From NCBI GenBank assembly GCA_044892505.1, contig CM097882.1, forward strand, positions 44,268,001-44,332,000: DNA of 64,000 bases, read 5' to 3'. The first letter of the stretch is position 1, and every line of letters begins with the position of its first letter. The translations under genes were made by a program, and so were the position numbers. Of the stretch, positions 22,378-61,505 are shown piece by piece. The notes under the pieces were generated by a model. It was given only the letters and a program-made list of their open reading frames with translations. It did not search any database and was not told the DNA's origin. Source of the stretch: Schmidtea nova. Lineage: Eukaryota.

Positions 22378-22769
22378 GTGAGTAAATTTTGTTGTCATTG
22401 TTTTTAAAAGCTATAATATACCTCATGCTTTCTTTGCGGCGTCCTTAGATGCTACCTTTCGCGTTCTATTTCATCTACTTCGCCAATTTAGTTGTTTACA
22501 TCAGTCATTAATACAGGACTATCAAACTCGATTTGCACCACTTAAGGCGGAGGGCAGCTTATTTTTAATAATATTTAAAAATAGGAAATTTAAAAAATCT
22601 CAGATTTATTCAAAAAATATACATAAAGCCAGTACATATTGTTGGGGTTAGTATTGAAACCATAAAAACAAAATCCAAACACAATAAATAATGTTAAAAT
22701 GAAAAAAATCTCAAAATAATTAAAAGTGTAAATTTTAATCATAAATCAATATTGATTGGAGGAAATGGA

Positions 22770-23750
22770 TATGGTTGAACGTCAAATCATAAGTCGAACT
22801 CAAAAAATAGTAATAAAAACTTAGTAAAAGGTTCCTAGAAAAATTATTGAAATATAACAAATTAATTAATCGCATAATGAAAATCCCGAAACAATGGGAA
22901 ACCCGAGCGGCGAGGAATGTCCGAAGCACAGGAAGATCTGAGAGATCAAAGACATGTTGGGCAAAAACTGAAGTTTGTTTAAATGGTGCGGTAATACAAC
23001 ATGTAAAGAGCGCGCAAGTAGATTTAAAATTCTGTGGGCCAAAACACCAAGTACACACCTGTGACAGTAGAACACATGAAATAATTGATCAAAACACATT
23101 TAAAAATTGAAATTAACAAAAGCGCACTGAGTGTATACGTGAAAAACACATGTATAACGTGAGAACATCAATTGTGTAATAGAATAGCACACTAGGAAAA
23201 ATTAACATCTTTTCGGTAGGAAATTTTCGAATTTCAAAAAAATACGAAAGAATTGTTTTAATTAGAAATTATGATAAACTAATTAAATTAGGAAAAACTT
23301 TGATTTAAAAATGAAATTTTAGATCAAAAATAAATTATTTAGAGTTAATTTAAATTTTATGCAAAAATAATAATTCAATTTTGCGTAAAATTTTTAAAAT
23401 TAATTTTCAAGACTCGGAAAATTTCTTCTAGAACAATTTGTTTTAATGCATCAACGAAAATAACAATTTAAGCAACAATTTATACCGCCATCAAAATAGA
23501 TTTCATCAGAATTTGCCAAAATTTTGCAGAATTTTCCGGAATTTTGTTGCTAAAAATTTTGAAACGTTTTTAGCAGTAAAATGTTTAAGAGAGAACTTTG
23601 CTTAAAATCGTTTGAAAGAATTCTCGGAAGGCGAACCACTCGAAAGATTTCTAGAAATCGTATCCGAACCAAGCGGAGAAGCTATTCGATTATGTAAGAA
23701 TCATGAATTTTATGTTATGCAGGCTAGCAAATCATGCCCTGTTACCCTGC
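22770..23750 (+). mobile_element. Family B LTR/leader-like repeat
   Basis: Shares CTAGAACAATTTGTTTTA and ATACCGCCATCAAAAT with 37140-37210, and a motif with 8310-8350. Confidence 0.5.
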
Positions 23751-23899
23751 CGTAGGTATTCCGATTTGATTTATTCGAAGATTGATAACTGTTATCTTAT
23801 GGTTAAATATGTAATGATTATTATAATTTCTTCTATTCAAGTTTTATTTTTGCTTTGATCATATTTTCTCACAACCTAACATACTTATATTGATATTCA

Positions 23900-24753
23900 T
23901 TTATTTATTTATCTGCCCAAAAACCAAATCTTGTAGGGACACTCGGGGTATATGCTTTTATGAGCGTACGTGCGTATGCTTGAATGCGAAATAATTATTA
24001 TAAACGGTTAATATCAAACTAATAATAATAACAAATTTATTTAAGATAGAAAATTGCAATAAGTCTACTTACTGGGAGAATTGGAAAAGTGGAAAAATTT
24101 GTCCGTGACGATATTTGATATTTAACAACTTTCAGTGAAATAATCGGAATAGAAGTTTGAAATGTATTTAAACCGAATCGTCTCCAACAACCACAGGTTA
24201 ATAACAAAAGTGACTATATTTTGTTTCAATGTCTCTCCGACAATATTTAATATGGAAGAACTGAAAGGGTGGAAGAATTTGTCCTTGATGATATTTGATA
24301 TTTAACAACCTTCAATGAAATAATTGGAATAGAAGCTTGGATCGAACTTGAATAGAATTATCTCCAACAACCTCAGGTTAATAACCAATACAACTTTATT
24401 TAATCTTTTAGCATAAAATTTTAATTATAAAAAAATCTATTTGTTTAATTTTGTAATTTATCCTAGCAATTTCTATAGTAAATTCATTTACTATAGAAAT
24501 TGTCTCATCGATTTTTTATTTAAATTTTTCCAACTATTTATTATTAATATTTTTTTGTAATAATAAATATAATAAACAAGGGGGAACCACACAAGGCGGA
24601 ACCCAAAATAAAAGCGGTTTCAAAAATGATGGCAATAATAAATAATAATAAAGATAATAACAATAATAAGATACGACATTCACAATATTTATATTGATGG
24701 CAATAATAAATAATAATAAAGATAATAACAATAATAAGATACGACATTCACAA

Positions 24754-24760
<7 letters not shown>
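23900..24760 (-). mobile_element. Solo LTR (family A), diverged copy with an internal ~180-bp tandem duplication
   Basis: GGACACTCGGGGTATATG motif; 16-bp-arm CTATAG hairpin at 24467-24502; AAGGGGG tract at ~24578. Confidence 0.6.
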
Positions 24761-24789
<29 letters not shown>

Positions 24790-24790
<1 letters not shown>

Positions 24791-37440: not shown

Positions 37441-40124
37441 TTAAATATTATATTTATTTTTATTGGGGATTGGGATGGTCGTCCATCATGCCTGACGATC
37501 ATCCCACTCCTCGTTCTTTGATAATTTGTTATTTATTATTTTATGGATTTATATATTGTTATTATGAAATTATTAAAATATTAATTCTTGTTAAAATTTT
37601 TCTTGTTATTATTATCGTAATAAGACATAAATTCCCTACCTAATGATTAGTTTACAAGCAGTTATTTGAATAAAATTATCGAAAATAAGTAAAGAAATTT
37701 TTTTTTCCCATATCTTCTGACGATCCGTCCAGCCTTAGTTGTGCGGATCTGTTAGTAGCCTGGGTGGATCGTTGTCTGATTGGTAATCGGCCAGCCCATA
37801 TTTCCACTTTAAGGTGAGGCTCATACATCCATAATCACGTCATCCCAACTGGGGAATCGTGGTATGGCCAAGAGCAAGGATTTGTTATACTAATGATTTT
37901 TATTATAATAAAGTAGCATATTTTTATTATCTACATAAGCACTTTCGTAATACAACATAAAATCTTCTAATTCATGTCTTGAAATCTAAAATAGGAAATA
38001 TTACTGATCAAAAATCGACTCGTACTCGCCTTCACCTTCACACTCTCAACGACGGTCATCTTATGAGAAAACGCAAGAAAAAATGGATGCTAATGATGAA
38101 AAGAAAATTGTTCGAAAAAATGCCCAAGACTAGAATAATGCTCACGAAATGAAACGAATTGTGAAACAAGTATTGATTTGATCTGAATTAAACTCATTAT
38201 TGTCTAAATAAGTTTTTCCTGTGAACCTCGTTTTCGAGAGCCTGAAATTCCTAAGTGAAGCGTCCCGAAAAATTCGCGCGCACTTTAATTGGGAAATTCA
38301 TGCTCAACAAAACCGAAATTCATTTCGCTCGATATCGAAAAATATTCTTTGAAGAATTTATAATTTATGATTTTTATTTTTATTCAGTGTATAAAACTTT
38401 TTAGGTTGAATGCTTATTTGGATTTCGAAATTTATGGATAAAAATTTATTATCATTTCATTTTGATCAGGAATAAAAATTTGCTTTTTATTATGCTGAAA
38501 AGATTTATAATGAAAAAATTGTAAACCAAAAATTTTCCTAATATTGTTATTATATAAAAGATTTTATCCTTTCATAAAATTCCAGAGAATCGCAAATCAA
38601 AAGATATATTAAACCCCATAAAAATTCTTTAGATCGGAATTTTATTTTTATATTGAAAACTCTTATCATTTTATAAAAATCTGAATTTGAAATTTTATAG
38701 AAAATTTTTTGGTTAATATATATATTCTAAAAATATAAAAAGTTAAATTCAAAAACCTATCTTATAAAAATTAAAAATTTTATCATTAGTAAATTTTTCA
38801 TAAAACTATAAATTAAAAATTCATAAAAAGCATTATAAAAATTATTATTATTATTTTAATTTAAAATTATTATTATTATTTTAAAATTATTTTATATAAT
38901 TTATAATATAACTACCCCCACGATATCTTAAAAATAATGATACATCACTCATTGCAAAAAATCACACCCTTTTCACTCAATAGCATCATCCATACTAATA
39001 TACAAGCAACATACATATAAAACACAATATACACACATGCACGGTGTCATTCAATAACATTCAACAATCACATACACACCAACCAACCATACCAAAAATT
39101 CCACACAGACATGCTAGTTAGAATCATACATCTAACCACACTCACAAGCACTCAATTGTTTTCAGTCACCCATCATAGAATCGCACGCAAACACGATAAC
39201 AATGAAATCAGTCAACCTATAATAATATTATATACAATCATTCCATCATCACAACATACTACCTGCTATATAAAAATTTCATCATAAAACAAAATGACAT
39301 ACCAACTTGGAAATTCCCCTGAATATTACCATCATTGATCCACATTCATGAAGAAACTCCCATCTAAATTCCCAACCCCTTTTATTCACCAGCCTCACCT
39401 TATTACTATGATCAGAAATCTACCACCCCATAATATATTTCCTAGCACTCATCACTACCTTACTTACGGCATCTTACATCTAAATTATTTGTTTTGCGTT
39501 TTAAAAATTTCTCAGCCACATCCACGCATAACTGCATACATCCACGATCTTCATAAATTATAAAATTATAACCTCAATCAACCACATTCGGAAAATCTTT
39601 GAATATCAATAAAGTAAGAGAAACAAAAACATATATTTTATTAAAATACAAATTGATCACCCATATAACATTTAAATCTAGGAAATATTACGTTTAACCT
39701 AAGGGGTAAATGGCATAATAACTCAGGAGCTCTCTTGCACAAGCCTCAACGATAAAATAAATAAAATTGGGCAAGTAAAGCCAGATTTCCACACCACAAA
39801 ACATGATAATAGAATTACAAATTGTTGGAATAAATTTCGACACATTGGGTCATGATCTCCAATCTTCGATGCCCAGAGTTTGTAGAGGGTGATCTTGCGG
39901 TGAAAAATGACAAAATTTACCTGAAAAGATAAATCAAAAAATAGAACATCTCCTTCAAAATGAATATTACCGATTTTTTTTTGTTTGTTCGGGAAATTTC
40001 CTATTGAACTCTGTTATAATTACTATTATACTCCGGATCTCTAAAATGGCTAATTGAGAAAAATTTTATAAAAAACCCGAACTTACCGTTAAGACCACAT
40101 CCGGATTTTTGTTTTTGTAAATGG

Positions 40125-40160
<36 letters not shown>

Positions 40161-40511
40161 GAGTATATATACATTAATTGTATTATATATATGTATATTT
40201 GAATTATATTCGTTTTAAATATATTTATTAACAGACTTAAACAAGGAGTTTAAGATTTGTTAATTTAGTAATAAACTGGCCAAATGAAGAATTAAATTCA
40301 AACTTTTCGATGCATAATTAAGATTCATTCTTAAAAAATTGTGTTATTTATTATTTATCCTAAAATTACAATATTAGAAAATTTAAGGTTTATTAGTGTT
40401 TTCGAATGTTCGGAATAATTTATTTGTATTTATAATTATGTAAAATATTTATGTAAATTTCTGATAAAATTTGTATTGAAAGCTTATAAGTAAATCATGT
40501 AAGGAGGGACA

Positions 40512-40740
40512 AAACGGGCAATAAACCTTCCATCGGTAGCCCTTGGACCCAGGAGATATTCGGTCAATCATAGTTTCGTATTGACGACGCTCACTGATTG
40601 CGAATACCCACCCACTTGTTACAGTACCAACGTTACATAGTGACGGTTAACAAGGTGGTAATTTCAATGTTTTATGTGTTGAGTTGTTGATGAGAGCCAT
40701 AGAAACGTCAAGGTCATATTGACGATCAACAACCCACCAC
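40512..40740. repeat. Family C dispersed repeat copy
   Basis: Homologous to 25-228 and 17715-17941. Confidence 0.85.
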
Positions 40741-40899
40741 ATTGCATTTTGATATGACTTCAAAATTATTTTCTGCAATTCCTTGAATTTATCCAGACGA
40801 TCGTCATCCTTGTTAAAGTTACAATCTACTTGTTTTGAATGTCTTTAGAGTCTGTTATTATTTAGTTTGTTATGTTGGACGTTTTATTATAATTAGATA

Positions 40900-41650
40900 T
40901 ACCTATATGTGGTTAATATATGTGTTTTTTACTGTTTATATGGTATGCGTAAGTGTGTACAAAGAGAAATGTAAGCGCCCGAGAGAGTCTTACGGTAATT
41001 GTGTGTAGACACTCGGGGTGTATGCTATGTGATGCAAAAACAGTAAAAACAAAATAATAAAACAAAGAAATTATTATCACAATAAAAGTTTTAACAATTA
41101 TTTTAATTACAAGCAACAAAAATTATAATATGATACTCACTAACTAGGATATTGTCCGATTTTTCGGATATAGATATCTTCGTTCTATTGCTATTTTTAT
41201 TTCTTATAATTAGTTAATTTTCTTAGTCCTTTTTGATTGTCTCTAATTTCTTTTGTCGCTATAAACTTTCACTTTTTTATTGTTGCTTCTTTGGTTTTGT
41301 CGTTCAAAGATCCTTGTATAGTAATTTTATATTTGATTGAAATTTTTCCTTGGTAATTTTCTTTTGATTCTGTTTAAGATCTATTATAATTTGAGTTTTT
41401 TACTAGATCATTTCCTTGGATTTTATTTCTATATTTGTCATCGATATTTTTATATTTATAAAAAAAAATCTTTAATCTTTATTTGTCATTAGCTTATTAT
41501 AGTTTATTACTATAGTAAGCTACTGGATTCAAATTTACAATTTGAATCTTGATAATTAAATTTTAATTAAGAGGTTATTTACAATTACCACCATAATAGT
41601 AATAAAAATTAGCAAAATAAAAAGGGGGGTCTCTATACCCTCAATAACAT
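40900..41650 (-). mobile_element. Solo LTR (family A) nested in the piggyBac
   Basis: CCCGAGAGAGTC...GACACTCGGGGTGTATG motif; TACTCAC; hairpin at 41490-41522; AAAAAGGGGGG tract. Confidence 0.7.
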
Positions 41651-42724
41651 TAAAAAATAATAAATTTCAATAAAACATAACTATTACAATCCTCTTCGGT
41701 ATTATCGTCACTCATATGAAAGCTGAAGCATCTCAAAATTTGCTCGAAACGTCGTCCAGACATCGTCGCACCAAAAATTGGATGGTAATATAATGGATCC
41801 TTTGAGAATAGGCTCCTCGATGATGGAAACGACAATTGCCCCTGTAGAAGGCAAAGACCCAAAAAATTTTTCATTTCCATCATACTGACTTCTTTGAAAA
41901 TACGCGATCTACTGTGTCGTGTTTGAGGAGGAGACTTATTCGACATGCTTGTTCCATAGCTATTCGTTGAAGAAAGAATCAAATTCATTATGTCCTCGTT
42001 ACACAATTTTTCAAAAACTGTAAATGGTGAAGGATTTTCTCCAAAATCAATTTTAACTCCACTTTGTGTTTCATCAAATGAATAATTAGGGATATATCTG
42101 TGTAATTGTGGTACCAATCAGTATCATCATTCTCATACACATTTACTGGAATGTTCTCAGGAACTAATTCGTCCTCACTTTCACTCCTACTACTATTAAC
42201 TTCAAAACTACACTCGTATTCAGTGTCTGATTCACTGAAATCCAACTCTTCGTCCAACATTTCACGTATATTGGGCTATCAATTTCAGATAATAAATAAA
42301 AGAAAGTTGATTAGCAAAACACACGAAACGCAAAAATTTTAAAATACCGAACACAAACTAATACTGAGGTATCATGTAGGTAGGTCACTGAAGTGAGTCA
42401 TCTTCAAGCCATGTTATTACCGTGTGTTTTGACGCCAAATGAATTCAAACCGTGTTCGTTGTATTTCTGTAGGGACACACGAATGCTACATGTATGCAAG
42501 TTCTAACAAAAATAGCCGTTTCGTCCCTAGTGATAACGTTTTATCATGACGACTATTACTGTTTCATCCCGTCTTAGACAAGCTCCTAGAGCGGCTATAA
42601 CCGTTTCGTCCGCGAACGTGTTAAGTAACGATATAATAAATTGAGATTGATTCATGTTAATAATTATGGACAGTATTTATAAATATATCTTAGTTTATAT
42701 CAATGACAAACAAACATTTAATTC

Positions 42725-42727
<3 letters not shown>

Positions 42728-42772
<45 letters not shown>
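42728..42772. repeat. (TAA)n microsatellite
   Basis: Direct inspection; similar (TA)n tracts at ~9459-9527, ~24758-24787 and ~40124-40150. Confidence 0.9.
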
Positions 42773-42773
<1 letters not shown>

Positions 42774-43919: not shown

Positions 43920-46900
43920 TAGGGCCGGCCCAAGCTCTTATGGCGCCCTAGGCCAAGGGTCTAAATCTCGCCCCATAAGTTTTAACAAACAAAAAAAAGA
44001 ATCAACTAAAAATTTTTTATTTTGTTTAACCTAAATTATGAATTATTAAAAAAATATTTTTATATCTTAAAAAATATTTTATTTTTATATTAAATTTAAT
44101 ACAAAACTTTCTTGATACCAATATGTATAAAACTTTTCTTTCTGGATAATGTTGCAGGATTTTTTTATCTACGAAAAAAGATAGATTTTATTTTTACTTA
44201 CATAAAAACGTTTTTCCGAGCTTTTATGGCTGCAAAATTGTTTATAAGATCATCCAGTTCCAATTTTCTTACTATATCGCGTTCGATGGAAAGAGTAGCT
44301 AAACCATCAAGGCAATCTTTGAGCATTGTAGAGCGCAAATAAGTTTTTATTAATTTAAGCTTAGAAAAGCTTCCATCTGCACTCGCTACAGTTATTGGCA
44401 ATGTTATTATGATTCGCAATGCAATATATATATATATATATATTTTTGGCAAGGCGGTTGTTAAATTATTCTCTAGCAAATAGTTTTGAATTGAAGTAGG
44501 AGAATCACAACAATCTTCAGACAAATGATTTTTGATGTATTTATTCGTCAAACAAATCCAAGCCGGAAATATCCTTTTGATCACTGTCAGTTAGGAGAAC
44601 TTCTAAATCCATACAATATTTCCGTATGTCATCATCCGTTATATTAGTGATATTGCCAAAGTTATATAGTAATTCGAATTTATTGTTATGTTCCTGAATT
44701 AGTTGAAAGCGATCACGTAATGATTGTATCGCGTTGTCCAATATATTGTTAGAGAAATTAACTTTAAAGTTTTGTATAGGGTCATCAAATACTTCATCAC
44801 GTTGTTCGTAATCAAATTGTCTTCTTTGACGGCAGACTCGTGCGCGTTCAAATTGTACATCAATATCTAAGTCAATTGCAATTATTTTAGCCTCCTCCAA
44901 AATACAATCAAATTTTGCATATGTTTTATAGTCTTCCAGGAACACCATGCTATTTGATAACAACGTTACTGCTTGGCTCAGGTTTAAACCAACTGCTTGA
45001 AATGCTTTGCTAGTTACATTTATATCAAAGAAAATATCATACCATACAATTAAAGAGCAGATAAATTTATATTTTTCAATTTTTTGCAATAGAGCTGTGG
45101 CTTCTGACTTGTTCCTCGCTTCTGTGACTGTGGTAATATTAGGTTGCCCATCCTCATTCATACAATCTAACAGAGCCGCAATAACTTCTTTGAGGTGATA
45201 TCGTAGAGGCTTTAAAGCATCAATTCGACTGGCCCATCTAGTTTCACTTAAACTTTTCAACGTAAAACCAGTAATATGTTTTTTAATAAAGCCCAGTGTT
45301 GAGTTGAAGATGAGAAAAAACATACAAATGCTGAATGATATCAAAAAAGTTATACTTTCAACACAACAGCTGGCAGAATCATTCACCACTAAATTTAGGG
45401 TATGTGCACTGCAAGGAACAAAAAAGCACTTGGGTTTAAATTAAGAATTCTAATTTGGACACCGCTATGTCGTCTGCGCATATTAAAGCCGTTATCATAA
45501 CTTTGACCTCTCATATTAGCCACTGACAAGTTATTTGACTCTAATACTTCTATAATCTTATCTGTAATTCCAGCTCCAGAACTATTATCAATTTCAATGA
45601 AACTTAAGAAATGCTCATGCACCTCAATGTGTTTTTCATCACCACTTGGACATACCACTCGGACAATTAATGACATGCTCAATATTGGAAACATCTGGAG
45701 TACAATCAATGATTATTGAATAATATTTATTCAGTTTCATTAAGTTCGTAATATTTTCTTTGACTGCAGAATTTAACAACGTAATAATTTCATTTTGAAT
45801 TCTTTTGCCAAAGTAATGTACGTGTAATTCTTTATTTTTTATTTGACGTACGTGTTCTTTCAAGATTGAGTCGAATTTGGCTATAAGCTCCACAATTTCC
45901 ATTGTTATCTTCATATAACTTATCAGATGTTCCTCTCAAAGCAAGGTTCTGTGACCCGTGTAACTTAATGATTTTAAATAATCTCTCCAAAACATTTCGC
46001 CAACGTATTGTATTTTCACTCACGAGTTTTTTATTAAATGAGTCAATAGTTTTTCCTTCATTCAATCTTCTGACCTAGTCATTTTATGTTGATATACATT
46101 TTAAGTGTTCAATTGTTTTTTCATGCTCTTTTAAGCTGGCTGACACGTTTTTTCAATTATTCAATACATTAACAGTTGGGAGATTTCTTTCTTAGAAAAA
46201 TGCTTGCATGTAAAACAGAAAACAGCATCATTAGATTTTGAATAAACCAACCACTTTCGTTGAATCTCTTCACCGTTAGGAGATGTTCGATAATAGTTTG
46301 TTGAACAAAACTTCCGTCTTCTTCCTTCCTTTTCTTGAACAGTTAATGGAAAATCAAAATTAATTATTTGCTCTGGTCCACGTATTACAAGTAAATCGAT
46401 ATTTGGGCCAATATTTTGCTGCCATTTCCCAATATCGGACAAATAGTCTTGGATACTTGGAACAACATCTAAAGAATTATGTTCGGAATTTATCGTTTCC
46501 GAATGAAAATTTATGTCAAATGTGTCATCAATTCTATGATCTGATTCAAGATCAGGTTCTGGATTGGAACAATATTCTTCAACGTCCAATGATTTCGATG
46601 AACTTATCAGATCTGTATCTGTGCAGGTAGACTCTGTCTCAATATTTTGGAGCTCATTTTCCGATTCTGAATCGTCACTTTGACGATCAACATTTTCAGA
46701 TTTAAAAAAAGAAATCTTTTGACATTTTTGTATTTGCTTTTCCTGCTCTGCTTTTCTTTTTCTACCTTGGTAGACACTTAGTTTTTTTGGAGGCATTATT
46801 ATGGGTTAAATATAAAGCCTAACAATGTAGAAAAACGAAAGATTAGAACGCTTATATTAAAACAAGGATTTATATCCTATTATAGATATTCATTGATATT

Positions 46901-49387: not shown

Positions 49388-49885
49388 ATGAATAGAGAAA
49401 TGTCTTTGGGTGCATTATTTCAGGTCGAATATGCATTTAAAGCGATTGCGTAAGATGGATTACTTTCTGTTGATGTTCGTGATAATGATTGTGGCGTAGT
49501 TGCTTCACAAAGAGAAGTTCCAGGTAAAATGAACAAACAGAATTCAGCTACAAGATTCTTTAACAATAATGAAAGTACCAGTTGCGTTAGGACCGGAATG
49601 ATTCCTGATTGCGGATCGCAAGTATGCCGTGCACAAATGGAAGCTGTACGATTTAAATGTGAACTGTCCTGTGACAGGATTTGTCAACGTATTGCCGAAA
49701 TTAATCAATTGTACACTCAATCAGCTGCAATGATGCCATTAGGCTGTTCAATCATCGCATTCTCTTACGATAAGGAGATGGATAAGCCACTGTTATTCAA
49801 AACTGACCCCAGCGGATTTGTAGCTGGTCTTTGAGCTGTTGCGGGCGGTGGAAAACAGTTGGAAGCTAAAAGCAATGGAGAAAGG
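49388..49885 (+). pseudogene. PSMA6: Intronless proteasome subunit alpha type-6 pseudogene fragment
   Basis: LFQVEYAFKAI*DGLLSV...TGMIPDCGSQV...RIAEINQLYTQSAAMMPLGC...KTDPSGF. In-frame stops at 49451 and 49832; the KYGY loop is missing. Confidence 0.9.
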
Positions 49886-50149
49886 AAGCACCGAAAGGAA
49901 ATCGGTGGCCAAACCAGCGTATAAGACGTTACCGAGCACGCTTAAGTCAGAATTCTAGAGCAGCTTTTGACATAGATCAGGTTCAACAATCGACAGTAGA
50001 GCCAGAAGATCACCAACTACAATCGCCTATTCGAGAAAGTTTATCAGAAATTCGTACTCTGGATGGTGGAGAAAATAGTGAAAGTCTTTTAGAAAAGAAA
50101 CATCAATTAAATAGAATGCGTTTATAACTTATAACTACAGAGATTGTTT

Positions 50150-50540
50150 CTGAATGCAATAGAGCTGATGTTGTTTTCATTCCACGAACAGACTTGGCAC
50201 CGAATGATATAAAGCTTCCATTCATTATCAAAAGACGTCAATTCCCCATAATTCCTGCGTACGCAATGACGATCAACAAATCCCATGGTCAAACCTTTGA
50301 TTACGTAGGGATTCACCTAAAAGAGCCAGGCTTTTCACATGGCCAGTTGCATGTCGCTCTAACAAGATGTAGGAATCCTCAACATCTCATAGTTCATATC
50401 AAGGCCAACAAACTCCAAGAAAGGCTTCAAAACAATACAAACCATTACACTCAGAACATTGTTTACAAAGAATTTTTTTCAAATTAGTACAATTTAAAAA
50501 AAAATAAAACTGCACCGTCTTAGGACGGGTCGATAATAAA
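50150..50540 (+). mobile_element. Helitron RepHel C-terminal PIF1 helicase fragment and 3' hairpin
   Basis: VFIPRTDLAP...LPFIIKRRQFPIIPAYAMTINKSHGQT...FSHGQLHVALTR...TQNIVYKE; hairpin CCGTC-TTAG-GACGG at ~50516-50529. Confidence 0.88.
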
Positions 50541-53500
50541 AACAAAACCAAATTAGAGTTTGTACACTACGCTGACATTTAATTTGTGATTATTTCATTC
50601 TTCATATTAACAATGTAATTAATTGATGATCAATTTTAATAATATTTTTTATTTGAAAATTCATTTTTTATTGTAAACTTCATGTTTCAATTAACTTTTA
50701 TTTCATTTTTAATTATGATGTCATAATTAATTCTAAAAGCAGTTTCAATATATTAGAATATATAAATATTGAAATGACGGTTTGACTAAAATTATAAATA
50801 TTTATATTAAATAGTAATCAGGATTAATAATTATTTATTTAAATAGTAAACCATTCAGTATATAAAGCCGGTGAAAAAATACAGAACTGGCTATATCATT
50901 TCTCGTTAAAATTTTTCGCATAAAATTCGAAGAAAAAATGAAATATATCAGCACAAAAAAGACTGAACAAAGTTATTATTAATTCACAATACATATTGTA
51001 AACATACAAATTACATACACAATACACGCACCTCGCAATCATCAGATTTCAATGGATTTTTATTTTGGAAGTATATATAAAACTGTATTGGATATTGTAA
51101 AAAGTAAATTTTTGTTTAAAAATTTCTATTAAAACGACTTTTCTTAGTTAATTATATGGACACCAGTGCAAATTGAGATTTCAGATAACTGATACCTCAA
51201 CAAATAGCGAAACGAAATTATTACTTAGGTTGTGTCAATTTGTTGTAAGGTGGCCTACGTCCACCACATATGTTGGGCGATCTGTGCATTTATTTAACTT
51301 AAATTTTATTTTAAAAGTTTTAACCGACCAATTTCATTTAGATCAATTTTTGTATGTCGCAGTTAAGAATTACCCTTTTATGCATATGTTATTATTTATT
51401 AATCTCTGTACTGTTACATGTTTTGCAAAGCATTTCTCGCTTTAATGGATAGTCCTAATTTTCTTAAATTCGTGTAACTCTCGTGCAATTCGATAGTAGT
51501 TTATTTCTTAGTTCGACTGCAAAATTACTGTAATCCCGTTACAATTTTTACTGAATGACTTGTGGTTATTTATTAACTTTACGCTACACAAATGAGGAGT
51601 GAGCTCTATATTATATTCAAACATGGTCCGGCTCTGGGTGAACATCGCTTTGGAATGCGTAACAATTATAATAGAATATACGAGTAACGTTTACTAGTCG
51701 AACTTCGACTGGTTACTCTAATAGATTATGACGATAAACACAGTTATAACTGTCCCTTCCCTTATTCTGGTTTCTGTGTTACCTCCTGATTAGGGTTACA
51801 TATTTGAATTTGCTTATGAGACGATCTAAAAAGATGCCCCAGTTAGCTTCTTTTAAAGTGTAATTGTGAAAAATGTATAAATTATTTAAAATACCTTCTC
51901 GGTTACTACATACGATTGTTTTCGCATTCCGCTCATTAGGGCCTGTTAAATGTGGGTCTACAAAATTGTTCAAGGAGCTCGTTCGCCAGCGTCAGCTGCT
52001 CATTACACTTTACCATGGGACTCAAAGAATCTCATGTCGATAAACTGGCGTTCGAATAATCTCTAATTGGGTCATGTGTCGGTGATTTTAATTCTTGTCC
52101 TGTAATTGTGCGTGCAATCGATTGGGTCAATATCGGAGTACAAAAATGAAAGGCTGAAAGTTCTAAAACATTTAATAAATAACAAAATTGTATACCGTAC
52201 AAAATAGAATCTTTCGGGACAAATCGGCTTAATCAAATAAACAAAATGAACACCAGTCGTTATATTACCGATTGGGGTCCGCATAAAATGGCCACTAACC
52301 TAAAGTAAAATAGCGCTTCACAATTTAAAGTTCAAAAAATAATAGTATTCAGAGTGTTTTAGCGTCAGTATATATAGAATATTTTTGATGACCTTGAATT
52401 AAAGTATTTAAACAAATCTACTGACATCATATATTCTATTAATAGTTTTTATTATTTTTATTCTCAAATTAAATTCTTACAAATTCTAAATTATTCCTAA
52501 TAATTTTATAATTTAATTAATTTGACATTTATTTCTTAAATTTATCATGAGTGTTTAAGTCTCTATCGAAATGGGAAATCCTTTTTCGCATGACTTGGAA
52601 ACCCAACTCCCAACAAATTTCTCGTACAGAAGGTGTCGGAATGATTGTACTCATTATCCGCATTAAAGCCTCTTCCAATGAATAATTTGATTGCATTTTG
52701 GTCATAAACATTGTTAAAAAATTCTGATCAAGTAATTCAGTCTCTACCGCTTAAACATGATGTTTCGCTTCATTAGTAGTGGCAGATACTAACCCTGGTG
52801 CTCGATAATTCTACACATTGTTATATCCTTGACTTTGGCTTATTGACATTTCTTTATTCATTAATTCGCATTAAATTTTCTTTAAATTGTTTTTTGATTA
52901 TCTTTTTGTGGAAAATAAATATTATACTTAAATAGTATCATAGATGTTTACATTATATGCATGGTGGCCTACATCTACCATATCTCGTGTGCATTTGAGT
53001 AGTTTATCGATTTAAATTGTACTCAAATTTCATTCAGTTAAGTTTTATTGTTGTTAGTGAAAATCCACTCGGCTATGTATACGATTTTATTCATCATTTC
53101 TTTCACGGCTAAATTTCTAAAGAATTCGCTCAATGAGGGAATTCTAATTTACTAAATTTTATGTAATTATATTGTCTTTCGACTGTAGTTTATTCGTTAG
53201 GTTATTTATCATTCTCTCATTAGCTTTGAACCTCATTACCATGACTAACAAAAAGGAGGATCGATTCAATATAATAATCTTGCATGGTTCGGCTCTGGGT
53301 GAACTTCACTTCGAAACAAGTACCACTGTTATGTTCAACGGGAAATGGGTTAAAGATAGCACAAGAAACTTTGTGAGAGAGTTTAATTAATTTATTAATA
53401 GAATTATTTATTTATTTACCTGACTCCAAACTATCGAATTATCTTTATAAATATATGATTATTTGGTTGCGTTGAATATCAAGTGATATTAATAAATCAA

Positions 53501-55399
53501 AATACTCTCTTAACACTTTTATTTATAACTAATGTACAAGTTTACTAAAGAAAATAAGACCCATATCAATTGATCAATTCCGTCACTTATCAGCAAGCAA
53601 TACGATTCCTTCTAATGGCAGGACACCGTTGATATAAAATAAATTCAGAGGGTACACTAAAGAAGCCAATTACTTTATGTACGGAAATTTAAAACTATTT
53701 ACCTCATTTAATTAAACAAATATATTTTTAAGCTAGTTACGTTGAATTAAAACTGTCTAAACGAAATCTGCTTTAATACTAATTTTATTGTTCAGTTGTC
53801 TTCACAACACCCTGTCCGATATAAATGTTAATATTTTCTTTTCACACAAATTCGCTTTTAAATGCCACAGATCATATAAAATATTTCTGTCGTGCAAACT
53901 AGACTTTGAATATCAAGATTGATGATTCCTCACTATTTTAAATGTCAAATTCCTGTTTACTGTGATTTTGATTGTCGGTTTATTTTCCAGGGTACTTGAT
54001 TTAACCATACAAATTGTTGACATTCGCAACAGGTTTTATCTCAGTCTTTGTTCCTCGTTTTTAACCATGCTATTCTTTAATTGTTCTGAGATATTTTTTT
54101 GTTCTGATTTACTTACAAACTTTTTCTCCTTTTATACTTAAATTATAATATTAATTACTATAAATATCTTTTTGATAATTATAAATTACTATAAATAATT
54201 CTAAATTAATTTAGAATTATATATCTAATTTTAGTATTTATCTATCTATTTTTAGCAATTACAAATTACCAACAATAGATTTTTGAAATTATTTAAATTA
54301 TTTTCTAGAAATTAAGGTTGAGGTCTAAGGGCCTATTATTAACACCGCGTATTATAGAAATACACTTATTTCTTAAATTTATCAATTTTATCTAAATATT
54401 ATTTATCTAAACGTTATAATATATCTTTCGCTATTTTTACAATAAGTATTTTGTTTTTCCTGCTCTCTGCTTGATTTTAGTCTAGAGTTTTCGAGTTATT
54501 TTTACTTGTGAATTTATTTAATTTTAAATCGAGTTGAGGTCTCTAATGNNNNNNNNNNNNNNNNNNNNNNNNNNNNNNNNNNNNNNNNNNNNNNNNNNNN
54601 NNNNNNNNNNNNNNNNNNNNNNNNNNNNNNNNNNNNNNNNNNNNNNNNNNNNNNNNNNNNNNNNNNNNNNNNNNNNNNNNNNNNNNNNNNNNNNNNNNNN
54701 NNNNNNNNNNNNNNNNNNNNNATTATATTTTTATTAAAAATAAAAATAAACAATATATCCACTAAACAATTACACCAAATATCACAAATAGATTTTTGAT
54801 CTTTTATGAATTTATTTTTATAAATGTGTCATATTGTGTGTATGTTCTTCAGTGCGTGCTATATGTAAATTTTTCTTTATAAAGGTGTTGGACATTTTTG
54901 TTCTGTCCGTATGATTTAATTTTCTCGCAGGATTTCCCATTGAGATATTTATTGTCGCAAAAGATTTTTGATGAAACTAAGTTTCAAAAATTTGTGGCCA
55001 ATTTTTGTTATTTTGTTTGCCTTTATATACTATTCTGTGCAATGTTTATTCAGCTATTATTTCTTGTTTAATTACTATATAAATAATTTTTTAAAAATTA
55101 TATTGGAAATGAATTCATTTAAATATTTAAAATAAATTGTACAAATATAAATCCATTATTTCTCGATTAAATCAATATCACTTGAAATCCATTAACAATT
55201 ATTTTTCACTTAAAAATAGAAAAATAAATAACTATTTATAAAAATAAATCCATATTCATATCAGTAAATTTATAAAAATATATAATAAAATAAAATAAGT
55301 CCATATATGCATTAAATGTTACATATCCATATCAATAAATTTATACAAATATATAATAAAATAAAATAAGTCTATATATACATAAAATGTTAAATGAAT

Positions 55400-58073
55400 G
55401 TCATAAAGATAAGATATGTAGTATGCAGAGATGTCTAAAAGGATAAACACAATTTAAAGGGATATCAAATGTTAAATAATGTCAATTGTCATAAGGGTGA
55501 TATTGTTGTTTGAATCGTATAGATTTTTTGATTGAAGGGTTAACTTGATTGACTACGTGGCATGAGAATTGAAATGAACTGATTCGCTAATTGATGTTCA
55601 TGGTTGTTTGTTGGGGTTTGATTGTTCTTGATTGTTGATTGTGCATGCGGGTTCTGCATAAAAAAAGACACACTATAATTTTCTGACAGGAGAATTGTGT
55701 CGATGGGATTACCCTCGTCATCCAAAACTTCCTCCCAGAGCCATCAAAGTAATGTCCTCATTACCTTTGTCGCACAGGATCAGGTCGATTTATTTCTCTT
55801 TTATTTGTATTGTTGTCTTTCGAAACCCATTTCTATTGCAAGATTTCCGTGCTCAATTTGTCGTCAAAATGAGTGCAGAGATTTTATTCTGAGACATATT
55901 TTCTTTCTTTATCTATTATAATATACGGTTCCTCCGGTTCTATCCAATCGACTTACATCTCAACGCTCGGTTCTGGTCCGATATCTTCCTTAGTTATGTT
56001 GTTCTTTCCACTTGTTGATGGTTCTTCACTATTTTCTTCCATTTCGTTGCTGTTTCTGCTTGTTGAATGTTCTTCCATACTTTCATCTAAGGAGAAATAT
56101 TCCTTATCTGGATCTAGGTCACATTCGTCCATTCTTTCGTATAGTATTTTCGTATCTTGGGGTATGCTTTAATTTCCTGAACTTGAATCTTAGGGGTTTT
56201 TCTTTTATGAATATGAGGTCATCAACGTCGCTCATCCATGAATATTTTTCTTGGTCCATCACGATTGACGTTTAACTCCCATTGAAGTGGTTCCATGCAT
56301 TCTCCTTCTTCGTATTCACTTTCTACCTCCCTTTCAAATATTGTTTCTAGTTGCTCTTCCTACTCATTTACTTGTCTTCTTTTAAGGAATGTTGCGGAAT
56401 CCCATCTGATAACTTCTTCCCATTTGTTTTCTGTAATGTCGTAGGTGACTTTTAGGATTAGCGTGGTGATCTTTGTTGAGAATGGCTCGAGTTGTCTCAG
56501 TATGTCGTTTAACTTTTTATCTTTGTACCAACCTTTGTGGTAATTGATCACCTGGTAAGCCAAATTTGATATTTTTATTTTTCGTGGGGCTTCATTTTTT
56601 ACAAATAAGCACATGAATCGGTCTTGTGCCATTTCTCTTATGCCCATAAGGTTATCCTGATCCATTGCCAATAGTTTTAATTTGTCTAAGATATTGAACC
56701 TTTTATAATTTTTCTGTGGAAAAGTTTTCGAATCTCATTTAGAGCTTTTTATTCGTTCTCATTTCCAATTATATTTTCTTTGGTGCCCTTTGTTTTTTCT
56801 GTGTAGAATACTTATACTATTGTTCTTGGGGTGATAAACTTGTTGTATAGAGTTGCTTATATTTTACTTGTGATACAGACCTCCACTGGTCAAAAATTTT
56901 CTTTATGTCTTGGATTAATTTGATGTCTACGAACACAGTTAACGAATGTTTTGCTTCTGTTGATAAATAATGATGCGTAAAGGATATTTTATGGTTTATC
57001 ATCTCTTCACTTATTTGTAGGATTGATTGTATTGGATCCAATTTTATAAATGGATTTGGAATTGTCGGGATGTATAGAAAACAAACTTTGAAAATAGAAA
57101 TAATCGCTTGAGGAAAGTTTTATTGACTATAATAGAAATAATAATAAAAACAATTTTAGAGACAGTCATTCTGACGAAATAATAGAGAAAGTCGTTCAGA
57201 TTATAATAGAAATAGAGGATAATAGAGGATAATAACATAATTAAAATATAAATGTTTCATCTTTACCCAGGGGATACGGTTGTCCTTAATCTTCAGCTCA
57301 GGTTTTACCTCTATTGGTTTTTCATTTTCAACAGCATCCATCTCTGGTCTAAATCTATCTCTCTGTATTGCTTCAATGTGTTTTACCTTTTGAACTAACT
57401 TATTTAAATTTCAATTCTAATAGTAATTATTGCCTTGTATAAATATTTTTGGATTCTGTTCCAAAATTGATCCTCAATTAATCTAGTAGGTTGTTCTGCT
57501 CCAAATGCTTTTTTCGCTGACTCGGTTATCGTATAAATATATTCACCTACTGATTCTCTTTCTCCTTGATATCTATTTTTAATTTTTTTTACATTTATTT
57601 TCTGTAAATCTATCTATTACTATCTCCTCTCTTAAATTTGCAACTAATTGATTATAATTATTTCTCTTACATTCTAAATTATTATATGCCTGTAGTGCAT
57701 ACCCTTTTAAATACAATGGGATTCTTTGTTTTAATTCGTCAGGTGTCCACCCGCAAGCTTCTGCACACTGGACCATCTCAGCAAAAGTCATTGACATTTT
57801 CGGGCTCTCCCTATATGATTCTACGGGTAATGTTTTTATGAAATTCTGATGGTGATTATTATTATTATTCATCCTATATATTATTCTATTCCTTAGGTTG
57901 TATACTATTTCAGGTGGGTTATCTATTTTAATTTATTGAAATTTTTATTTGGTCAATAATAATATTTGATATAAATATATTTTCCCGATATATGCTACAC
58001 TAACCCTCTGATCGCAATAGCTATCCTCCAAATAACAATAATTAATTTTTATGTCCCGGTTTGCGGCACCAAA
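55400..58073 (-). mobile_element. Internally deleted Gypsy element: PBS, gag and integrase-like remnants adjoining a family A 5' LTR
   Basis: PBS TGGTGCCGCAAACCGGGA (58071-58054, most like the tRNA-Phe 3' end) lies 2 nt from the LTR's CA; gag ORF 57872-57579 (ACGW...IPLYLKGYALQAY); no RT recognised. Confidence 0.7.
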
Positions 58074-59132
58074 TGTTTAGGTCTCGAATGTTTAGACTTA
58101 AACGTGCTATGGGGTCTAACTATATTGTTGAATGTATTTTTTATTATAATATATATTGTAAATGATTTTATGTTTTTATCAACAGAAATCTGCAAGGGCC
58201 CAAAAGAGTCTCCCAAAGCTTATTGTGGGGACAATTGGAGTGTATGCTTGTAAACTTTTGTGTAAGTGAAATATAATCTTAACAAATAAATTAAAATCTT
58301 AACAAGTAACGAACTTTAAACTAATTATTTTTTTGCAAAGATAACAATGTAGCTAAAACAGGTACTCACTAATAGAATGTCTATTTAGAATAAAGGAATC
58401 GGCTTAGTTCTTTTTTTCCCTTTCAGTATCAAAAAATAGGTTTTTGAATAATTCTGACTTTAACTTTTTAATTTTTCCAATCGTTTCCAATCTATTTCTG
58501 ATTTGCCTTAAATTAGGATTTTGATGGAATTTTATATTCTCTTGTATTTACTAATTTTCTTTATTTCTTAATTGATTTTTATTTTTGTCTTCAAATTTGT
58601 TTCGTAAGTTTTCTTTTACAATTAGTTAGTTCTTTTTTTCCTTTCAGTATCAAAAAATAGGTCTTTGAATAATTCTGACTTTAACTTTTTAATTTTTCCA
58701 ATCGTTGTAATCTATTTCTGATTTGGCTTAAATTAGGATTTTGATGGAATTTTATATTCTCTTGTATTTACTAATTTTCTTTATTTCTTAATTGGTTTTC
58801 TATTTTTGTCTTCAAAAATGTTTGGTAAGATTTTCTTTTTAAAATTGTCGTAAGTTAGTTGAAAGCTGGTTATAATAAATAGTTTTGGAATTTTCTTTTA
58901 ATTTTCAAATTCAATTTCATTATTATTCCATCAAAAATCGATATCTCTAATTTATTATTTGGCCTGATATAGCAATTTGCTATAGCAAGCCAAATTCAAA
59001 TTCACAGCTAAAATAACATAATAAAAATTAGGACTACGATCATAACTAAAAATCAAAATCATAATAAAATCACTCTCATAATAAAAACACCATAATAATC
59101 TAATTCATACTTAAAAATCACAAAATGGGAGT
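58074..59132 (-). mobile_element. Family A LTR (5' LTR of the adjacent Gypsy) with a 222-bp internal tandem duplication
   Basis: AGAGTC...GGGACAATTGGAGTGTATG motif; GGTACTCAC; duplication 58404/58626; hairpin at 58959-58993. Confidence 0.75.
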
Positions 59133-59299
59133 NNNNNNNNNNNNNNNNNNNNNNNNNNNNNNNNNNNNNNNNNNNNNNNNNNNNNNNNNNNNNNNNNNNN
59201 NNNNNNNNNNNNNNNNNNNNNNNNNNNNNNNNNNNNNNNNNNNNNNNNNNNNNNNNNNNNTTGTGATTAGATTTTTATTAAAAATGAAACTTACAAATA

Positions 59300-61343
59300 C
59301 AGTCGATTCCGCTTAATTGGGACACATCGGGACTTATGCATTTTGTCCCAATTAAGCGGCTGCCCCAATTAAGCGGCTGTCCCAATTGAGCGAATTTTTT
59401 TTCTTTATTTAATTTGGTTTTGGCAACAAAGTCGATAAACCAGTACTACAAATATAATGGAACACCATATATATTTTTTGGTTTTATTTTATAACCCCTT
59501 TGCTCAAATTACATTTGGGTAATATAAATTAGGGGTATTTATTCATATAAATTATCTTATAAATAAAAAAAATTACTGCAAATAAACCTTTGAGGAAAAA
59601 AAATAAATAAGTGGCTCACTAAATTTAATTCAATCACAAATATGAGTCAAGAGAGACCTGTCTTTTGTTTTTGTAACATTTCACTTCTACAAAATCAGCA
59701 CAGATTGTTAGTGCGCCCGTAGGGCTCCCTTCATTTCCTTCCTGCATAAAATAACGCTGTAACGCGACCATACATTTTTTAGCCTCCTGGTTAGTCACAG
59801 GAATAGGTGATTCCTCGTCATCCTCGCCATCGGTGTCTAGTTTTTTATTTTTTGATTTAATACTTTCTACAATTGAATCCACACAGTCTTCATTGTCGTC
59901 GTAACATTGTAAATTGTTTTCTATTGTTGAAAACTTTTCGTTGTTAATAAAAGGGACTTGCTGCATGTTCTCATTTTCTTCAATGCTTGAAATTTCGGCA
60001 GCATCTAAGAATCGAAAGCCAAAATTTTCAAAACAGTTTCGTATTGTGGTGGGTTTTATAGCTCGCCAACTGTCGGTCACAAACTGTAAAGCTTGCAAAA
60101 GTGAAATTTTTGAACTTATCTCTCTGGCTGTTGCTGAACTTGTCAATAAATTTTCATCAATGGATTCTAATATGTAGTTAACCAATTTTCCGCGATACAA
60201 AGTCTTAAAATTTTTTATTACCCCCATGTCCATCGGTTGCACTAAAGATGTGGTATTAGGCGGAAGAAATTCTAGCTGAATGTTTTTTAAATTGTCTTAA
60301 CGAGGGTGTGCCGCACAATTATCAACAAGTAGCAAGATTTTTCTTTGTTCTAATTGCAAATTTCGATCCCAACTAGCAAGCCAATTTCGAAAAATTGGGC
60401 TTTTTTATATTTGATGTTGTGTCTTGCTTTCCATCGCGATAACCAACCATCAGTTGCTTTGAAATCATTGTGGCCTAGTTTTTTAGCTAACTCTTCGGAC
60501 TTAGCCTTTAATATTGGACCATTTATATTTACGCCCTTGCCACTGACAATAAAAAACCATTGATCTAACGCTTCTTTAACGCCTGGATCCTTACCATCGC
60601 GTTTTCTTTTGAATGTGGCTGCTCGTCCTTCTTCTAACATCCATTCCTCGCGCAGTTGATTTTCTTGTAATAAGACACGCGATATGGTGGATTTAGGCAC
60701 ACCAGTTATCTCAGCAAGCCGGCGACTGCTTGTATTAAGAGGCTGGCTTTTTATTTTGTCCAGCAAAGCGATTTTACTGGAAAGTGTCAAATCATTTCTT
60801 GGGTCAAAATTTTTAAATAAATTTAAAAAAAAATTACGCACTGTTTACCCACAAGGTGTATTGGCGACTGAATAAGGTATACGCAAGGTGGTGACGCGCC
60901 GATCAGCAGTATTAAATCGCAAATATAAAATTTTTTGTACAAATTTTTTTCTTGAGAATATTTAAACAATGGAATAAATCTTTATAATTTTTTTATTTTA
61001 CTTTAAAATTATTAAAATTACTTTTAAAAAATTAAAATTACTTTATCATCATCTAAATTACTTTATTATCATAATTACTTTAACCGATAAGCCTCAATAC
61101 TTTCTATTATGTTGATTAGTCGTTAAAATAAATTAACATAAAATTTTTTGTTAATAAAGAACTAACCTTAAAAAATGTATGTGCACATATCTTAAATTTA
61201 CTGTCCCAATTAAGCGGAATGTTGTCCTAATTAAAGATATAATTTTACTATTGTTTATAGGGTTTGGTTTCGGGTCTTTGAGATTTGTCCCAAATAAGCG
61301 GCTGCCCCAATTAAGCGGTGTCCCAATTAAGCGGAATCGACTG
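59300..61343 (-). mobile_element. Tigger/pogo transposon, internal-deletion derivative
   Basis: Perfect 26-bp TIR CAGTCGATTCCGCTTAATTGGGACAC; TA TSD; subterminal CCCAATTAAGCGG repeats; CENP-B/Tc5 HTH (60841-60350, FKATDGWLSRWKARH) joined to LLVDNC...FLPPNTTSLVQPMDMG. Confidence 0.95.
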
Positions 61344-61505
61344 TATATCCATTGAACAATTACACAACAAATAGTTTTTTGATCTTGATAAACCACATCA
61401 CCAACAGTTATTAAATCGTTCTGGAAACAAGAAGCTTTTCTTTTTAGTTAGCTAGATATTAAAAATAACAAATTTTTTATTGTTTAATAATTTTATATTA
61501 TTCAG

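What the first reader, a model, noticed from the sequence alone, without database searches (positions are those of the whole stretch)
22378..61505. WWOX has a 39-kb intron at the same codon junction as the human FRA16D giant intron 8
Seen in the sequence: exon 5 ends FSPFTKSL|GTGAGT. The nearest acceptor (22410) gives an immediate stop, while an exon at 61506 restores the WWOX C-terminus in phase. The intron is 39,128 bp as assembled (includes two N gaps), whereas most other introns here are about 45-105 nt. Established, recalled from memory: human WWOX intron 8 (~780 kb, fragile site FRA16D) interrupts PFTKSM|QQGAATT. Inference: the outsized, TE-absorbing final intron may be a deeply conserved property of this position rather than a vertebrate peculiarity.
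Basis: partly seen in the sequence, partly recalled or inferred. Interest (0 to 1): 0.85.

Follow-up and report, generated by a model that had tools for sequence, protein, structure and literature searches.

The report
Giant last intron in a WWOX gene
An AT-rich invertebrate's WWOX gene has its last coding exon about 39 kb downstream, across an intron full of transposons; the intron sits at an ancient, widely shared position, and its large size looks lineage-specific rather than deeply conserved.

Summary
A six-exon WWOX orthologue lies on the + strand from 18443 to 61739. Exon 5 ends SPFTKSL|GTGAGT at 22377, phase 0. The only sequence in the window that matches the WWOX C-terminus starts right after an AG at 61506. 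A profile of 116 WWOX proteins tiles exon 5 to position 346 and exon 6 from position 347 (E 3.7e-12).

The intron is 39,128 nt as assembled, and 32,171 nt of it is gap-free. The two N gaps lie inside it, so reading frame is not an issue, but continuity across them cannot be shown. At least 43% of the intron lies within spans marked by transposon-type ORFs.

The evolutionary inference is only partly supported. I mapped introns in nine other animals. Eight have this phase-0 intron, so sharing the human position is expected. Seven of those eight are small (111-1172 nt) and never the largest. Only amphioxus has a giant one (65,301 nt). A 2021 review (PMC8305172) already proposes that large WWOX introns are conserved.

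No transcript evidence exists, and the species is not identified. The protein is highly derived and has lost catalytic residues.

The parts
18443..18525 (+). WWOX exon 1: ATG, MESDTDSDSELPPGWEKSINQGTIFYI, first half of WW1; ends in phase 2, donor GTTATT
   Evidence: WWOX profile positions 5-32, E 4.7e-5; the intron after it is at the same alignment column and phase as in 8 of the 9 other animals mapped
18570..18744 (+). WWOX exon 2: rest of WW1 (second Trp replaced by Leu), vestige of WW2, linker ...FDSFSTSEQ; donor GTAAGA
   Evidence: weak profile match to positions 76-116
21572..21814 (+). WWOX exon 3: start of the SDR domain, VIGGCSGIG nucleotide-binding motif
   Evidence: Pfam adh_short E 1.5e-6; WWOX profile positions 110-191, E 5e-11
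21864..22066 (+). WWOX exon 4: ...EDGFETSFQVNVLSLFY...ACESH; ends in phase 2, at the same junction (ESH|R) as all nine other animals
   Evidence: profile positions 195-263, E 2.6e-17
22116..22377 (+). WWOX exon 5: ends SPFTKSL in phase 0, followed by donor GTGAGT
   Evidence: profile positions 266-346, E 8.8e-13
22378..61505 (+). Intron 5: GT-AG, phase 0, 39,128 nt as assembled (38,827 read bases); about 800 times the median of the gene's other introns
61506..61739 (+). WWOX exon 6: C-terminal region (QxAAST..C..GxYFNNxCxCxPS..LW) to stop TGA at 61737-61739. A further 54-nt in-frame intron at 61666-61719 is possible but unresolved.
   Evidence: E down to 6e-7; profile positions 347-405, E 3.7e-12
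54549..54721 (.). Assembly gap inside intron 5 (173 N); ends the gap-free block that carries exons 3-5
59133..59260 (.). Assembly gap inside intron 5 (128 N); lies 38 nt left of the pogo-like element
25404..29492 (.). Maverick/Polinton-type remnant: adenovirus-type protease ORF (26365-26646, +) and broken family-B DNA polymerase ORFs (27101-29492, -)
   Evidence: Pfam Peptidase_C5 E 7.5e-6; DNA_pol_B_2 E 3.2e-12; polB relatives
35566..42275 (-). piggyBac-type transposase in two pieces (35566-36478 matches the middle and C-terminal part of the profile, 41653-42117 the N-terminal part), about 5 kb apart; consistent with one copy split by later insertion
   Evidence: Pfam DDE_Tnp_1_7 E 6.9e-20, 1.1e-17 and 4e-3
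44544..46805 (-). Run of broken ORFs, one with a weak DUF4371 match (hAT-like transposase relative)
   Evidence: E 1.8e-3, below Pfam's cut-off
49454..50484 (+). Intronless proteasome alpha-6 fragment followed by a Helitron/PIF1-type helicase C-terminus
   Evidence: Pfam Proteasome E 2.7e-18; PDB PSMA6 E 1.6e-28, residues 36-162; UvrD_C_2 and Herpes_Helicase matches
59299..61344 (-). Pogo/Tigger-type element with both ends intact: perfect inverted repeat of 29 nt including the flanking TA on each side; CENP-B/Tc5 HTH and DDE_1 ORFs; ends about 160 nt upstream of the exon-6 acceptor
   Evidence: (DDE_1 E 2.6e-18, HTH_Tnp_Tc5 E 3.4e-13)

Best explanation
This is the WWOX orthologue of an unidentified, AT-rich (28% GC), fast-evolving invertebrate. 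Its last coding exon is separated from exon 5 by a canonical GT-AG, phase-0 intron of at least 32 kb (39 kb as assembled). The intron occupies an ancestral bilaterian intron position, which vertebrates also keep as intron 8. It grew large in this lineage by repeated insertion of DNA transposons: a Maverick, a piggyBac that was itself later split, a hAT-like element, a Helitron carrying a proteasome gene fragment, and a pogo element with intact ends. The size is a lineage-specific expansion, not an inherited property of the position.

Shown: exon and intron coordinates, homology of exon 6, conservation of the position, and transposon content. Inferred: that exon 5 is actually spliced to exon 6, and that the growth happened independently of the chordate expansion.
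For: - Gene model and splice sites.
- Exon 6 is the only C-terminal match in the window, and it continues directly from exon 5 in orthologue and profile coordinates.
- Exon 6 keeps an open frame and the family's invariant motifs (AA[ST]T, YFNN, PS, LW) in a protein only 30-33% identical to other WWOX proteins. This argues that selection still acts on it.
- The giant intron has the gene's only consensus donor, GTGAGT. The four short introns have GTTATT, GTAAGA, GTTAGA and GTGTTT.
- The exon carrying exactly the missing part of the gene lies downstream on the correct strand. That itself supports the scaffold's order and orientation.
- Transposon domains inside the intron. The spans they mark cover at least 43% of the read bases.
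- Same alignment column and phase in 8 of 9 other animals, with small sizes in seven.
Against: - There is no transcript evidence, so the 22377-61506 junction is a prediction.
- Exon 5 and exon 6 lie on different contigs, joined through two N gaps whose continuity I could not test.
- The only close relative in the databases (P0001, 78% identical) is a gene model that reads through the donor and lacks the WWOX C-terminus. That fits a distant exon missed by a gene predictor, but it also fits a gene that ends after exon 5.
- The genome-wide intron length distribution of the species is unknown, because the species was not identified.
Confidence: 0.75

Rival explanations
1. The gene now ends after exon 5 (read-through gives SL-VSKFCCHCF-stop), and the 61506 exon is a stranded relic cut off by transposon insertions. 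It would be a dying exon rather than part of a 39-kb intron.
For: The relative's model P0001 ends in read-through sequence after SPFTKTL. The protein has already lost WW2 and the catalytic Ser and Lys, so constraint on it may be relaxed. An organism whose usual introns are 44-49 nt may splice poorly across 39 kb (inference).
Against: Exon 6 has an intact 77-codon frame beginning right at a good acceptor. It retains the most conserved WWOX C-terminal motifs, with profile E 3.7e-12. A relic in a 72% AT, fast-evolving genome would be expected to decay. P0001's tail looks like a gene-predictor read-through of the homologous intron start.
Confidence: 0.1
2. Assembly artefact: the scaffold is misjoined at one of the two gaps, so exon 6 is not 39 kb downstream, or not on this chromosome segment at all.
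For: Exons 3-5 and exon 6 are on different contigs (blocks 21379-54548 and 59261-64000), with a third contig between them. Nothing in the sequence bridges either gap.
Against: A random misjoin would almost never place the single missing WWOX exon downstream on the right strand. Even if the join is wrong, the intron is at least 32,171 nt, because the gap-free block after exon 5 holds no C-terminal exon.
Confidence: 0.07
3. One reading: an outsized terminal WWOX intron is an ancient property of this position, maintained by selection and inherited by this animal and by chordates from their common ancestor.
For: The giant intron sits at the same junction in this window, in amphioxus (65,301 nt, 40 times its next largest intron) and in vertebrates (780 kb in human; PMC8305172). 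That review argues that WWOX intron length is conserved even in Fugu and Drosophila.
Against: Seven of eight other animals with this intron, spanning the three major bilaterian groups (Lophotrochozoa, Ecdysozoa, Deuterostomia), have 111-1172 nt there. It is never their largest intron, and a tardigrade has lost it. Leaving out the window, the intron is the largest in 1 of 8 species, against 1.1 expected by chance. In the fly Hermetia the large introns (6.7, 18.7 and 14.3 kb) are at other positions and this one is 158 nt. The contents here are young, lineage-specific transposons, including a pogo element with perfect terminal repeats.
Confidence: 0.08

Closest known systems
Vertebrate WWOX intron 8 (human FRA16D, mouse fragile-site counterpart)
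   Same: Same phase-0 junction, PFTKS[LM]|[QS]Q.AA. It is the largest intron of the gene and precedes the single exon that encodes the conserved C-terminal region.
   Different: It is 780 kb in human (PMC8305172), against 39 kb here. Fragility, replication timing and alternative 3' exons are documented in human and untestable here. Human WWOX also has a second giant intron (intron 5, 222,570 nt), which has no counterpart here. I did not fetch or compare any human sequence.
Branchiostoma lanceolatum WWOX terminal intron (locus L005)
   Same: Same junction and phase. At 65,301 nt it is 137 times the median of the gene's other introns. The assembly is gap-free and no nearer C-terminal exon exists.
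   Different: It belongs to a slowly evolving chordate with a canonical WWOX protein (two WW domains, intact catalytic residues). I did not analyse the intron's contents.
WWOX of oyster, Lingula, Owenia, Ptychodera, Hermetia, Priapulus and Apis
   Same: Orthologous genes with an intron at the identical column and phase. They also share the intron positions after YY[AV]|NH (Priapulus excepted) and after ESH|R.
   Different: Their terminal intron is 111-1172 nt and ranks 4th to 6th in size. They keep both WW domains (Priapulus only the second) and the catalytic Ser/Tyr/Lys.
Transposon-inflated long introns in repeat-rich invertebrate genomes (general phenomenon, from established knowledge)
   Same: A short ancestral intron grows by nested insertions of DNA transposons. 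It has a strong consensus donor.
   Different: Nothing distinctive apart from the coincidence with the WWOX fragile-site intron position.

Membership tests
WWOX (WW domain-containing oxidoreductase) orthologue | Two N-terminal WW domains | tested here: not met
   WW1 is recognisable (LPPGWE...FYINH; profile positions 5-32, E 4.7e-5), but its second Trp is Leu. WW2 is only a vestige inside exon 2, and profile positions 33-75 are unmatched. The region is continuous within exon 2, so the N gaps cannot hide WW2.
WWOX (WW domain-containing oxidoreductase) orthologue | Short-chain dehydrogenase domain with a Gly-rich nucleotide-binding motif | tested here: met
   Pfam adh_short on exon 3 (E 1.5e-6, above the curated cut-off) and exon 4 (E 7.6e-5, just below the cut-off); GGCSGIG is present.
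WWOX (WW domain-containing oxidoreductase) orthologue | Catalytic Ser / Tyr-x-x-x-Lys of the SDR active site | tested here: not met
   SSESH is ACESH, and Y-N-x-S-K is Y-A-L-C-N. The Tyr is kept; the Ser and Lys are replaced. The relative P0001 shows similar changes: SCESH (first Ser kept, second replaced by Cys) and YALSS.
WWOX (WW domain-containing oxidoreductase) orthologue | WWOX-specific C-terminal extension (PFTKS[LM]-QQGAATT...YFNN..C.C.PS...LW) | tested here: met
   Exons 5 and 6 match profile positions 266-405 (E 8.8e-13 and 3.7e-12).
WWOX (WW domain-containing oxidoreductase) orthologue | Best database matches are WWOX, and intron positions are shared with WWOX genes | tested here: met
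   In the scan of 1.84 billion representatives, exon 5 hits its relative P0001, an unnamed 1063-aa protein (P0002, short partial match, not examined), the WWOX-like fragment P0003, and a protein named WWOX-like (P0004). Three of the five introns are at identical column and phase to other WWOX genes.
FRA16D-type giant fragile-site intron | Intron at the junction after codon 352 (PFTKSM|QQGAAT), phase 0 | tested here: met
FRA16D-type giant fragile-site intron | Outsized relative to the gene's other introns and to the genome's norm | tested here: inconclusive
   It is about 800 times the median of the gene's other introns. The genome-wide distribution is unknown because the species was not identified. 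The window also has a 14.8-kb transposon-rich stretch upstream of the gene.
FRA16D-type giant fragile-site intron | Chromosomal fragility or late replication under replication stress | not testable with these tools
   Needs cytogenetic or replication-timing experiments.
FRA16D-type giant fragile-site intron | Large size inherited across animals (conservation of size, not only of position) | tested here: not met
   Seven of eight other animals with the intron have 111-1172 nt there.

The most novel reading that the evidence does not exclude
The terminal WWOX intron is a recurrent hot spot for gigantism. It would have become the gene's dominant intron independently in chordates (amphioxus plus vertebrates) and in this distant invertebrate, because separating the exon that encodes the C-terminal region gives a selectable benefit, such as delayed or tunable production of the full-length versus the truncated protein.
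Probability: 0.1. Interest if true: 0.6.

Novelty: new member of a known kind. Interest (0 to 1): 0.3.

Why it matters
Why WWOX carries enormous introns, one of which hosts the fragile site FRA16D, is stated as an open question in the field (PMC8305172). This window adds a non-chordate case in which the same intron is the giant one. The side observation of a 65-kb intron at the same junction in amphioxus pushes the chordate expansion back before vertebrates. The nine-species comparison also shows that the position is ordinary ancestral heritage and the size is labile, which weakens the appeal to deep conservation. On a practical level, gene predictors are likely to truncate this gene, as the relative's model suggests. 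The protein itself looks like a pseudo-enzyme.

Tried and rejected
- **A nearer C-terminal exon or a second SDR gene in 22378-61505.** I searched with tblastn of the window's own exons, tblastn of 13 relatives, and a 116-sequence WWOX profile against all six-frame ORFs of 12 aa or more. Nothing turned up.
- **Bridging the N gaps through repeats within the window**. Nothing spans them.
- **Species identification.** All of these failed:
  - The close relative P0001 is an unnamed UniParc entry.
  - A homologue search with P0001 found only P0001 itself.
  - The Maverick polymerase ORF gave no match above 50% identity and no close named match.
  - Rfam and tRNA scans of the window were empty.
  - The Logan run id of P0003 appears in no paper.
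  - My guess is a triclad flatworm, based on 28% GC, 44-49-nt introns, a gene-poor and transposon-rich region, and a relative present only in UniParc. This is untested.
- **Genomic loci for P0001 and P0004.** None were on record, so the relative's intron could not be examined.
I searched exon pieces instead.
- **Pfam on flanking ORFs** gave nothing useful about the neighbouring genes.
- **Human sequence.** I did not fetch, save or compare any human contig. None of the loci L001-L010 is human. The facts about the human gene come from papers and from my own recollection.


Full report
**What is there**

The window is 28.4% GC and has seven N gaps. On the + strand I reconstructed a six-exon gene:
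- e1 18443-18525
- e2 18570-18744
- e3 21572-21814
- e4 21864-22066
- e5 22116-22377
- e6 61506-61739

The introns are 44, 2827, 49, 49 and 39,128 nt. The 400-aa product begins MESDTDSDSELPPGWE and carries an SDR domain (Pfam adh_short). It ends with the WWOX-type C-terminus.

Exon 5 ends ...SPFTKSL with CTA|GTGAGT, and exon 6 starts after ...TTATTCAG|AGT CAA GCT. Both junctions are phase 0.

**Is exon 6 really the missing end of this gene?**

- Exon 5 alone, scanned against 1.84 billion representative proteins, found four hits: a 346-aa close relative (P0001, 90% identical over this exon), an unnamed 1063-aa protein with only a short partial match (P0002, not examined), a 179-aa fragment (P0003), and a tardigrade protein named WWOX-like (P0004).
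- A homologue search seeded with the tardigrade protein returned 744 hits at E <= 1e-20. Of the 120 listed, nearly all that carry a source name are annotated WWOX.
- tblastn of 13 relatives against the whole window matches the C-terminal ~55 residues at one place only. All 11 full-length orthologues match 61506-61685, and eight of them pick up at the very next query residue after the exon-5 match.
- A profile built from 116 orthologues tiles the exons with no overlap and no gap at this junction: e5 covers positions 266-346 and e6 covers 347-405 (E 3.7e-12). Every other ORF in the window scores E > 0.05.
- Self-comparison shows no duplicated exons.

The homology, the phase and the position all agree. 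No second SDR gene is present that could own the exon.

**The N gaps**

Both flagged gaps (54549-54721 and 59133-59260) lie inside the intron in AT-rich non-coding sequence. Nothing coding runs into them, so reading frame does not matter. I found no repeat or element that bridges either gap, so continuity cannot be demonstrated. I did not fill them.

Three points follow:
- Exons 3-5 and exon 6 are on different contigs, joined by two scaffold links.
- The gap-free block after exon 5 is 32,171 nt and holds no C-terminal exon. The intron is at least that long whatever the gaps hide.
- The one missing exon lies downstream on the correct strand. That is itself good evidence that the scaffold's order and orientation are right.

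**Contents of the intron**

ORFs with transposon domains mark these elements:
- a Maverick/Polinton remnant, with an adenovirus-type protease and a broken family-B polymerase, at 25.4-29.5 kb
- a GIY-YIG ORF at 32.6-33.1 kb
- a piggyBac transposase split into two pieces about 5 kb apart (35.6-36.5 and 41.7-42.3 kb)
- a weak DUF4371/hAT-like run at 44.5-46.8 kb
- an intronless proteasome alpha-6 fragment next to a Helitron-type helicase end at 49.5-50.5 kb
- a 2.05-kb pogo-type element with a perfect inverted repeat of 29 nt (counting the flanking TA), ending about 160 nt from the exon-6 acceptor

The minimal spans they mark add up to 16.6 kb, or 43% of the read bases.

**Comparison with other animals**

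I fetched the annotated WWOX loci of nine species. I mapped every intron by exact spliced matching and then placed the introns on a protein alignment.

| Species | Size of the phase-0 intron after PFTKS[LMT] (nt) | Note |
|---|---|---|
| Oyster | 582 | ranks 6th in its gene |
| Lingula | 321 | ranks 6th |
| Owenia | 1172 | ranks 4th |
| Ptychodera | 1013 | ranks 4th |
| Hermetia (fly) | 158 | ranks 4th |
| Priapulus | 258 | ranks 5th |
| Apis | 111 | ranks 4th |
| Amphioxus | 65,301 | largest; 40 times its next largest intron |
| Tardigrade | absent | |

The amphioxus locus is a gap-free assembly with no nearer C-terminal exon.

Non-human vertebrate WWOX proteins of 414 aa read PFTKSM|QQGAAT at residues 352|353. 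A human variant named c.1056+5G>C shows that a human exon ends at codon 352. The review PMC8305172 gives 780 kb for human intron 8 and 222,570 nt for intron 5.

So the shared position is ordinary ancestral heritage. The window also shares the introns after YI|NH and ESH|R with nearly all of these species.

Size is not conserved. Leaving out the window, which was picked because of its size, the intron is the largest in 1 of 8 species, against 1.1 expected by chance. Including the window it is 2 of 9 against 1.3 expected (P = 0.39). In Hermetia the large introns are at other positions.

**Interpretation**

The best reading is a real, canonical intron at an old position that transposon insertions enlarged in this lineage. 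Two features fit a long intron that is still spliced, though this is inference:
- It has the gene's only consensus donor, GTGAGT.
- Exon 6 keeps an open frame and the invariant motifs AA[ST]T, YFNN, PS and LW, in a protein only 30-33% identical to other WWOX proteins.

The main uncertainty is the absence of transcript data. The relative's gene model (P0001) reads through the donor and lacks the C-terminus. Either a predictor missed a distant exon there too, or the lineage uses a truncated protein.

At most the expansion is chordate-wide (amphioxus plus vertebrates), with an independent case here. The general claim that WWOX intron length is conserved beyond mammals is already published for Fugu and Drosophila (PMC8305172).

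**Limits**

- The species is unidentified, so the genome-wide frequency of introns this long is unknown.
- The intron length depends on estimated gap sizes.
- Only ten WWOX genes were compared.
- No human contig was fetched, saved or compared.

Noticed in passing
window 18443-22377 and 61506-61739 (protein level): The WWOX protein is highly derived. WW1's second Trp is Leu, and WW2 is reduced to a vestige. The active-site Ser is Cys (ACESH), the YxxxK Lys is Asn (YALCN), and NAG is SAG. The relative P0001 shows similar losses (SCESH, YALSS; SAG and the WW changes shared), so this lineage probably has a non-catalytic or altered WWOX.
   Followed up: partly
L005 6671-71971 (Branchiostoma lanceolatum): Amphioxus WWOX has a 65,301-nt terminal intron at the same phase-0 junction. 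That is 137 times the median of its other nine introns, in a gap-free assembly with no nearer C-terminal exon. The giant intron 8 therefore seems to predate vertebrates.
   Followed up: partly
window 49454-50484 (+): An intronless ORF matches residues 36-162 of proteasome subunit alpha-6 (E 1.6e-28). It lies directly upstream of a Helitron/PIF1-type helicase C-terminus. It is a gene fragment captured by a Helitron, or a processed pseudogene.
   Followed up: partly
window 59299-61344: A pogo/Tigger-type element with both ends intact (perfect 29-nt inverted repeat including the flanking TA) sits about 160 nt upstream of the exon-6 acceptor and 38 nt right of an assembly gap. Its transposase frame is split into two ORFs.
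   Followed up: yes
window 35566-36478 and 41653-42117 (-): Two collinear pieces of one piggyBac-type transposase lie about 5 kb apart, which suggests a nested insertion into an older element.
   Followed up: partly
window 61666-61719: A possible additional 54-nt in-frame intron (GTAAAG...TTTTAG) in the last exon. Spliced or not, the frame ends at the same TGA (61737-61739). Splicing would give a tail (NKINEIELS) closer in length to orthologues.
   Followed up: no
window 18745-21571: Intron 2 is 2.8 kb. It contains two N gaps (19813-20256 and 21199-21378) and a 45-nt tandem repeat of 6.7 copies (20609-20908). So not all the other introns of this gene are tiny.
   Followed up: partly
L002 1079-1285 (Logan SRR12131175, unnamed organism, 36% GC): Another animal's WWOX fragment. 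It has intact catalytic YNNAK and a GTAAGA donor immediately after PFTKSL. The gene call reads through the donor, as in P0001.
   Followed up: partly
window 3838-18442: The 14.6 kb upstream of the WWOX start is also transposon-rich. It holds a reverse-transcriptase fragment (5236-5499), an Endonuclease_7 fragment (16427-16747) that also shares about 75% DNA identity over 150 nt with the intronic Maverick polymerase region (16496-16645 vs 28495-28644), and interspersed repeats shared with the intron. Repeat load is therefore not special to the intron.
   Followed up: no
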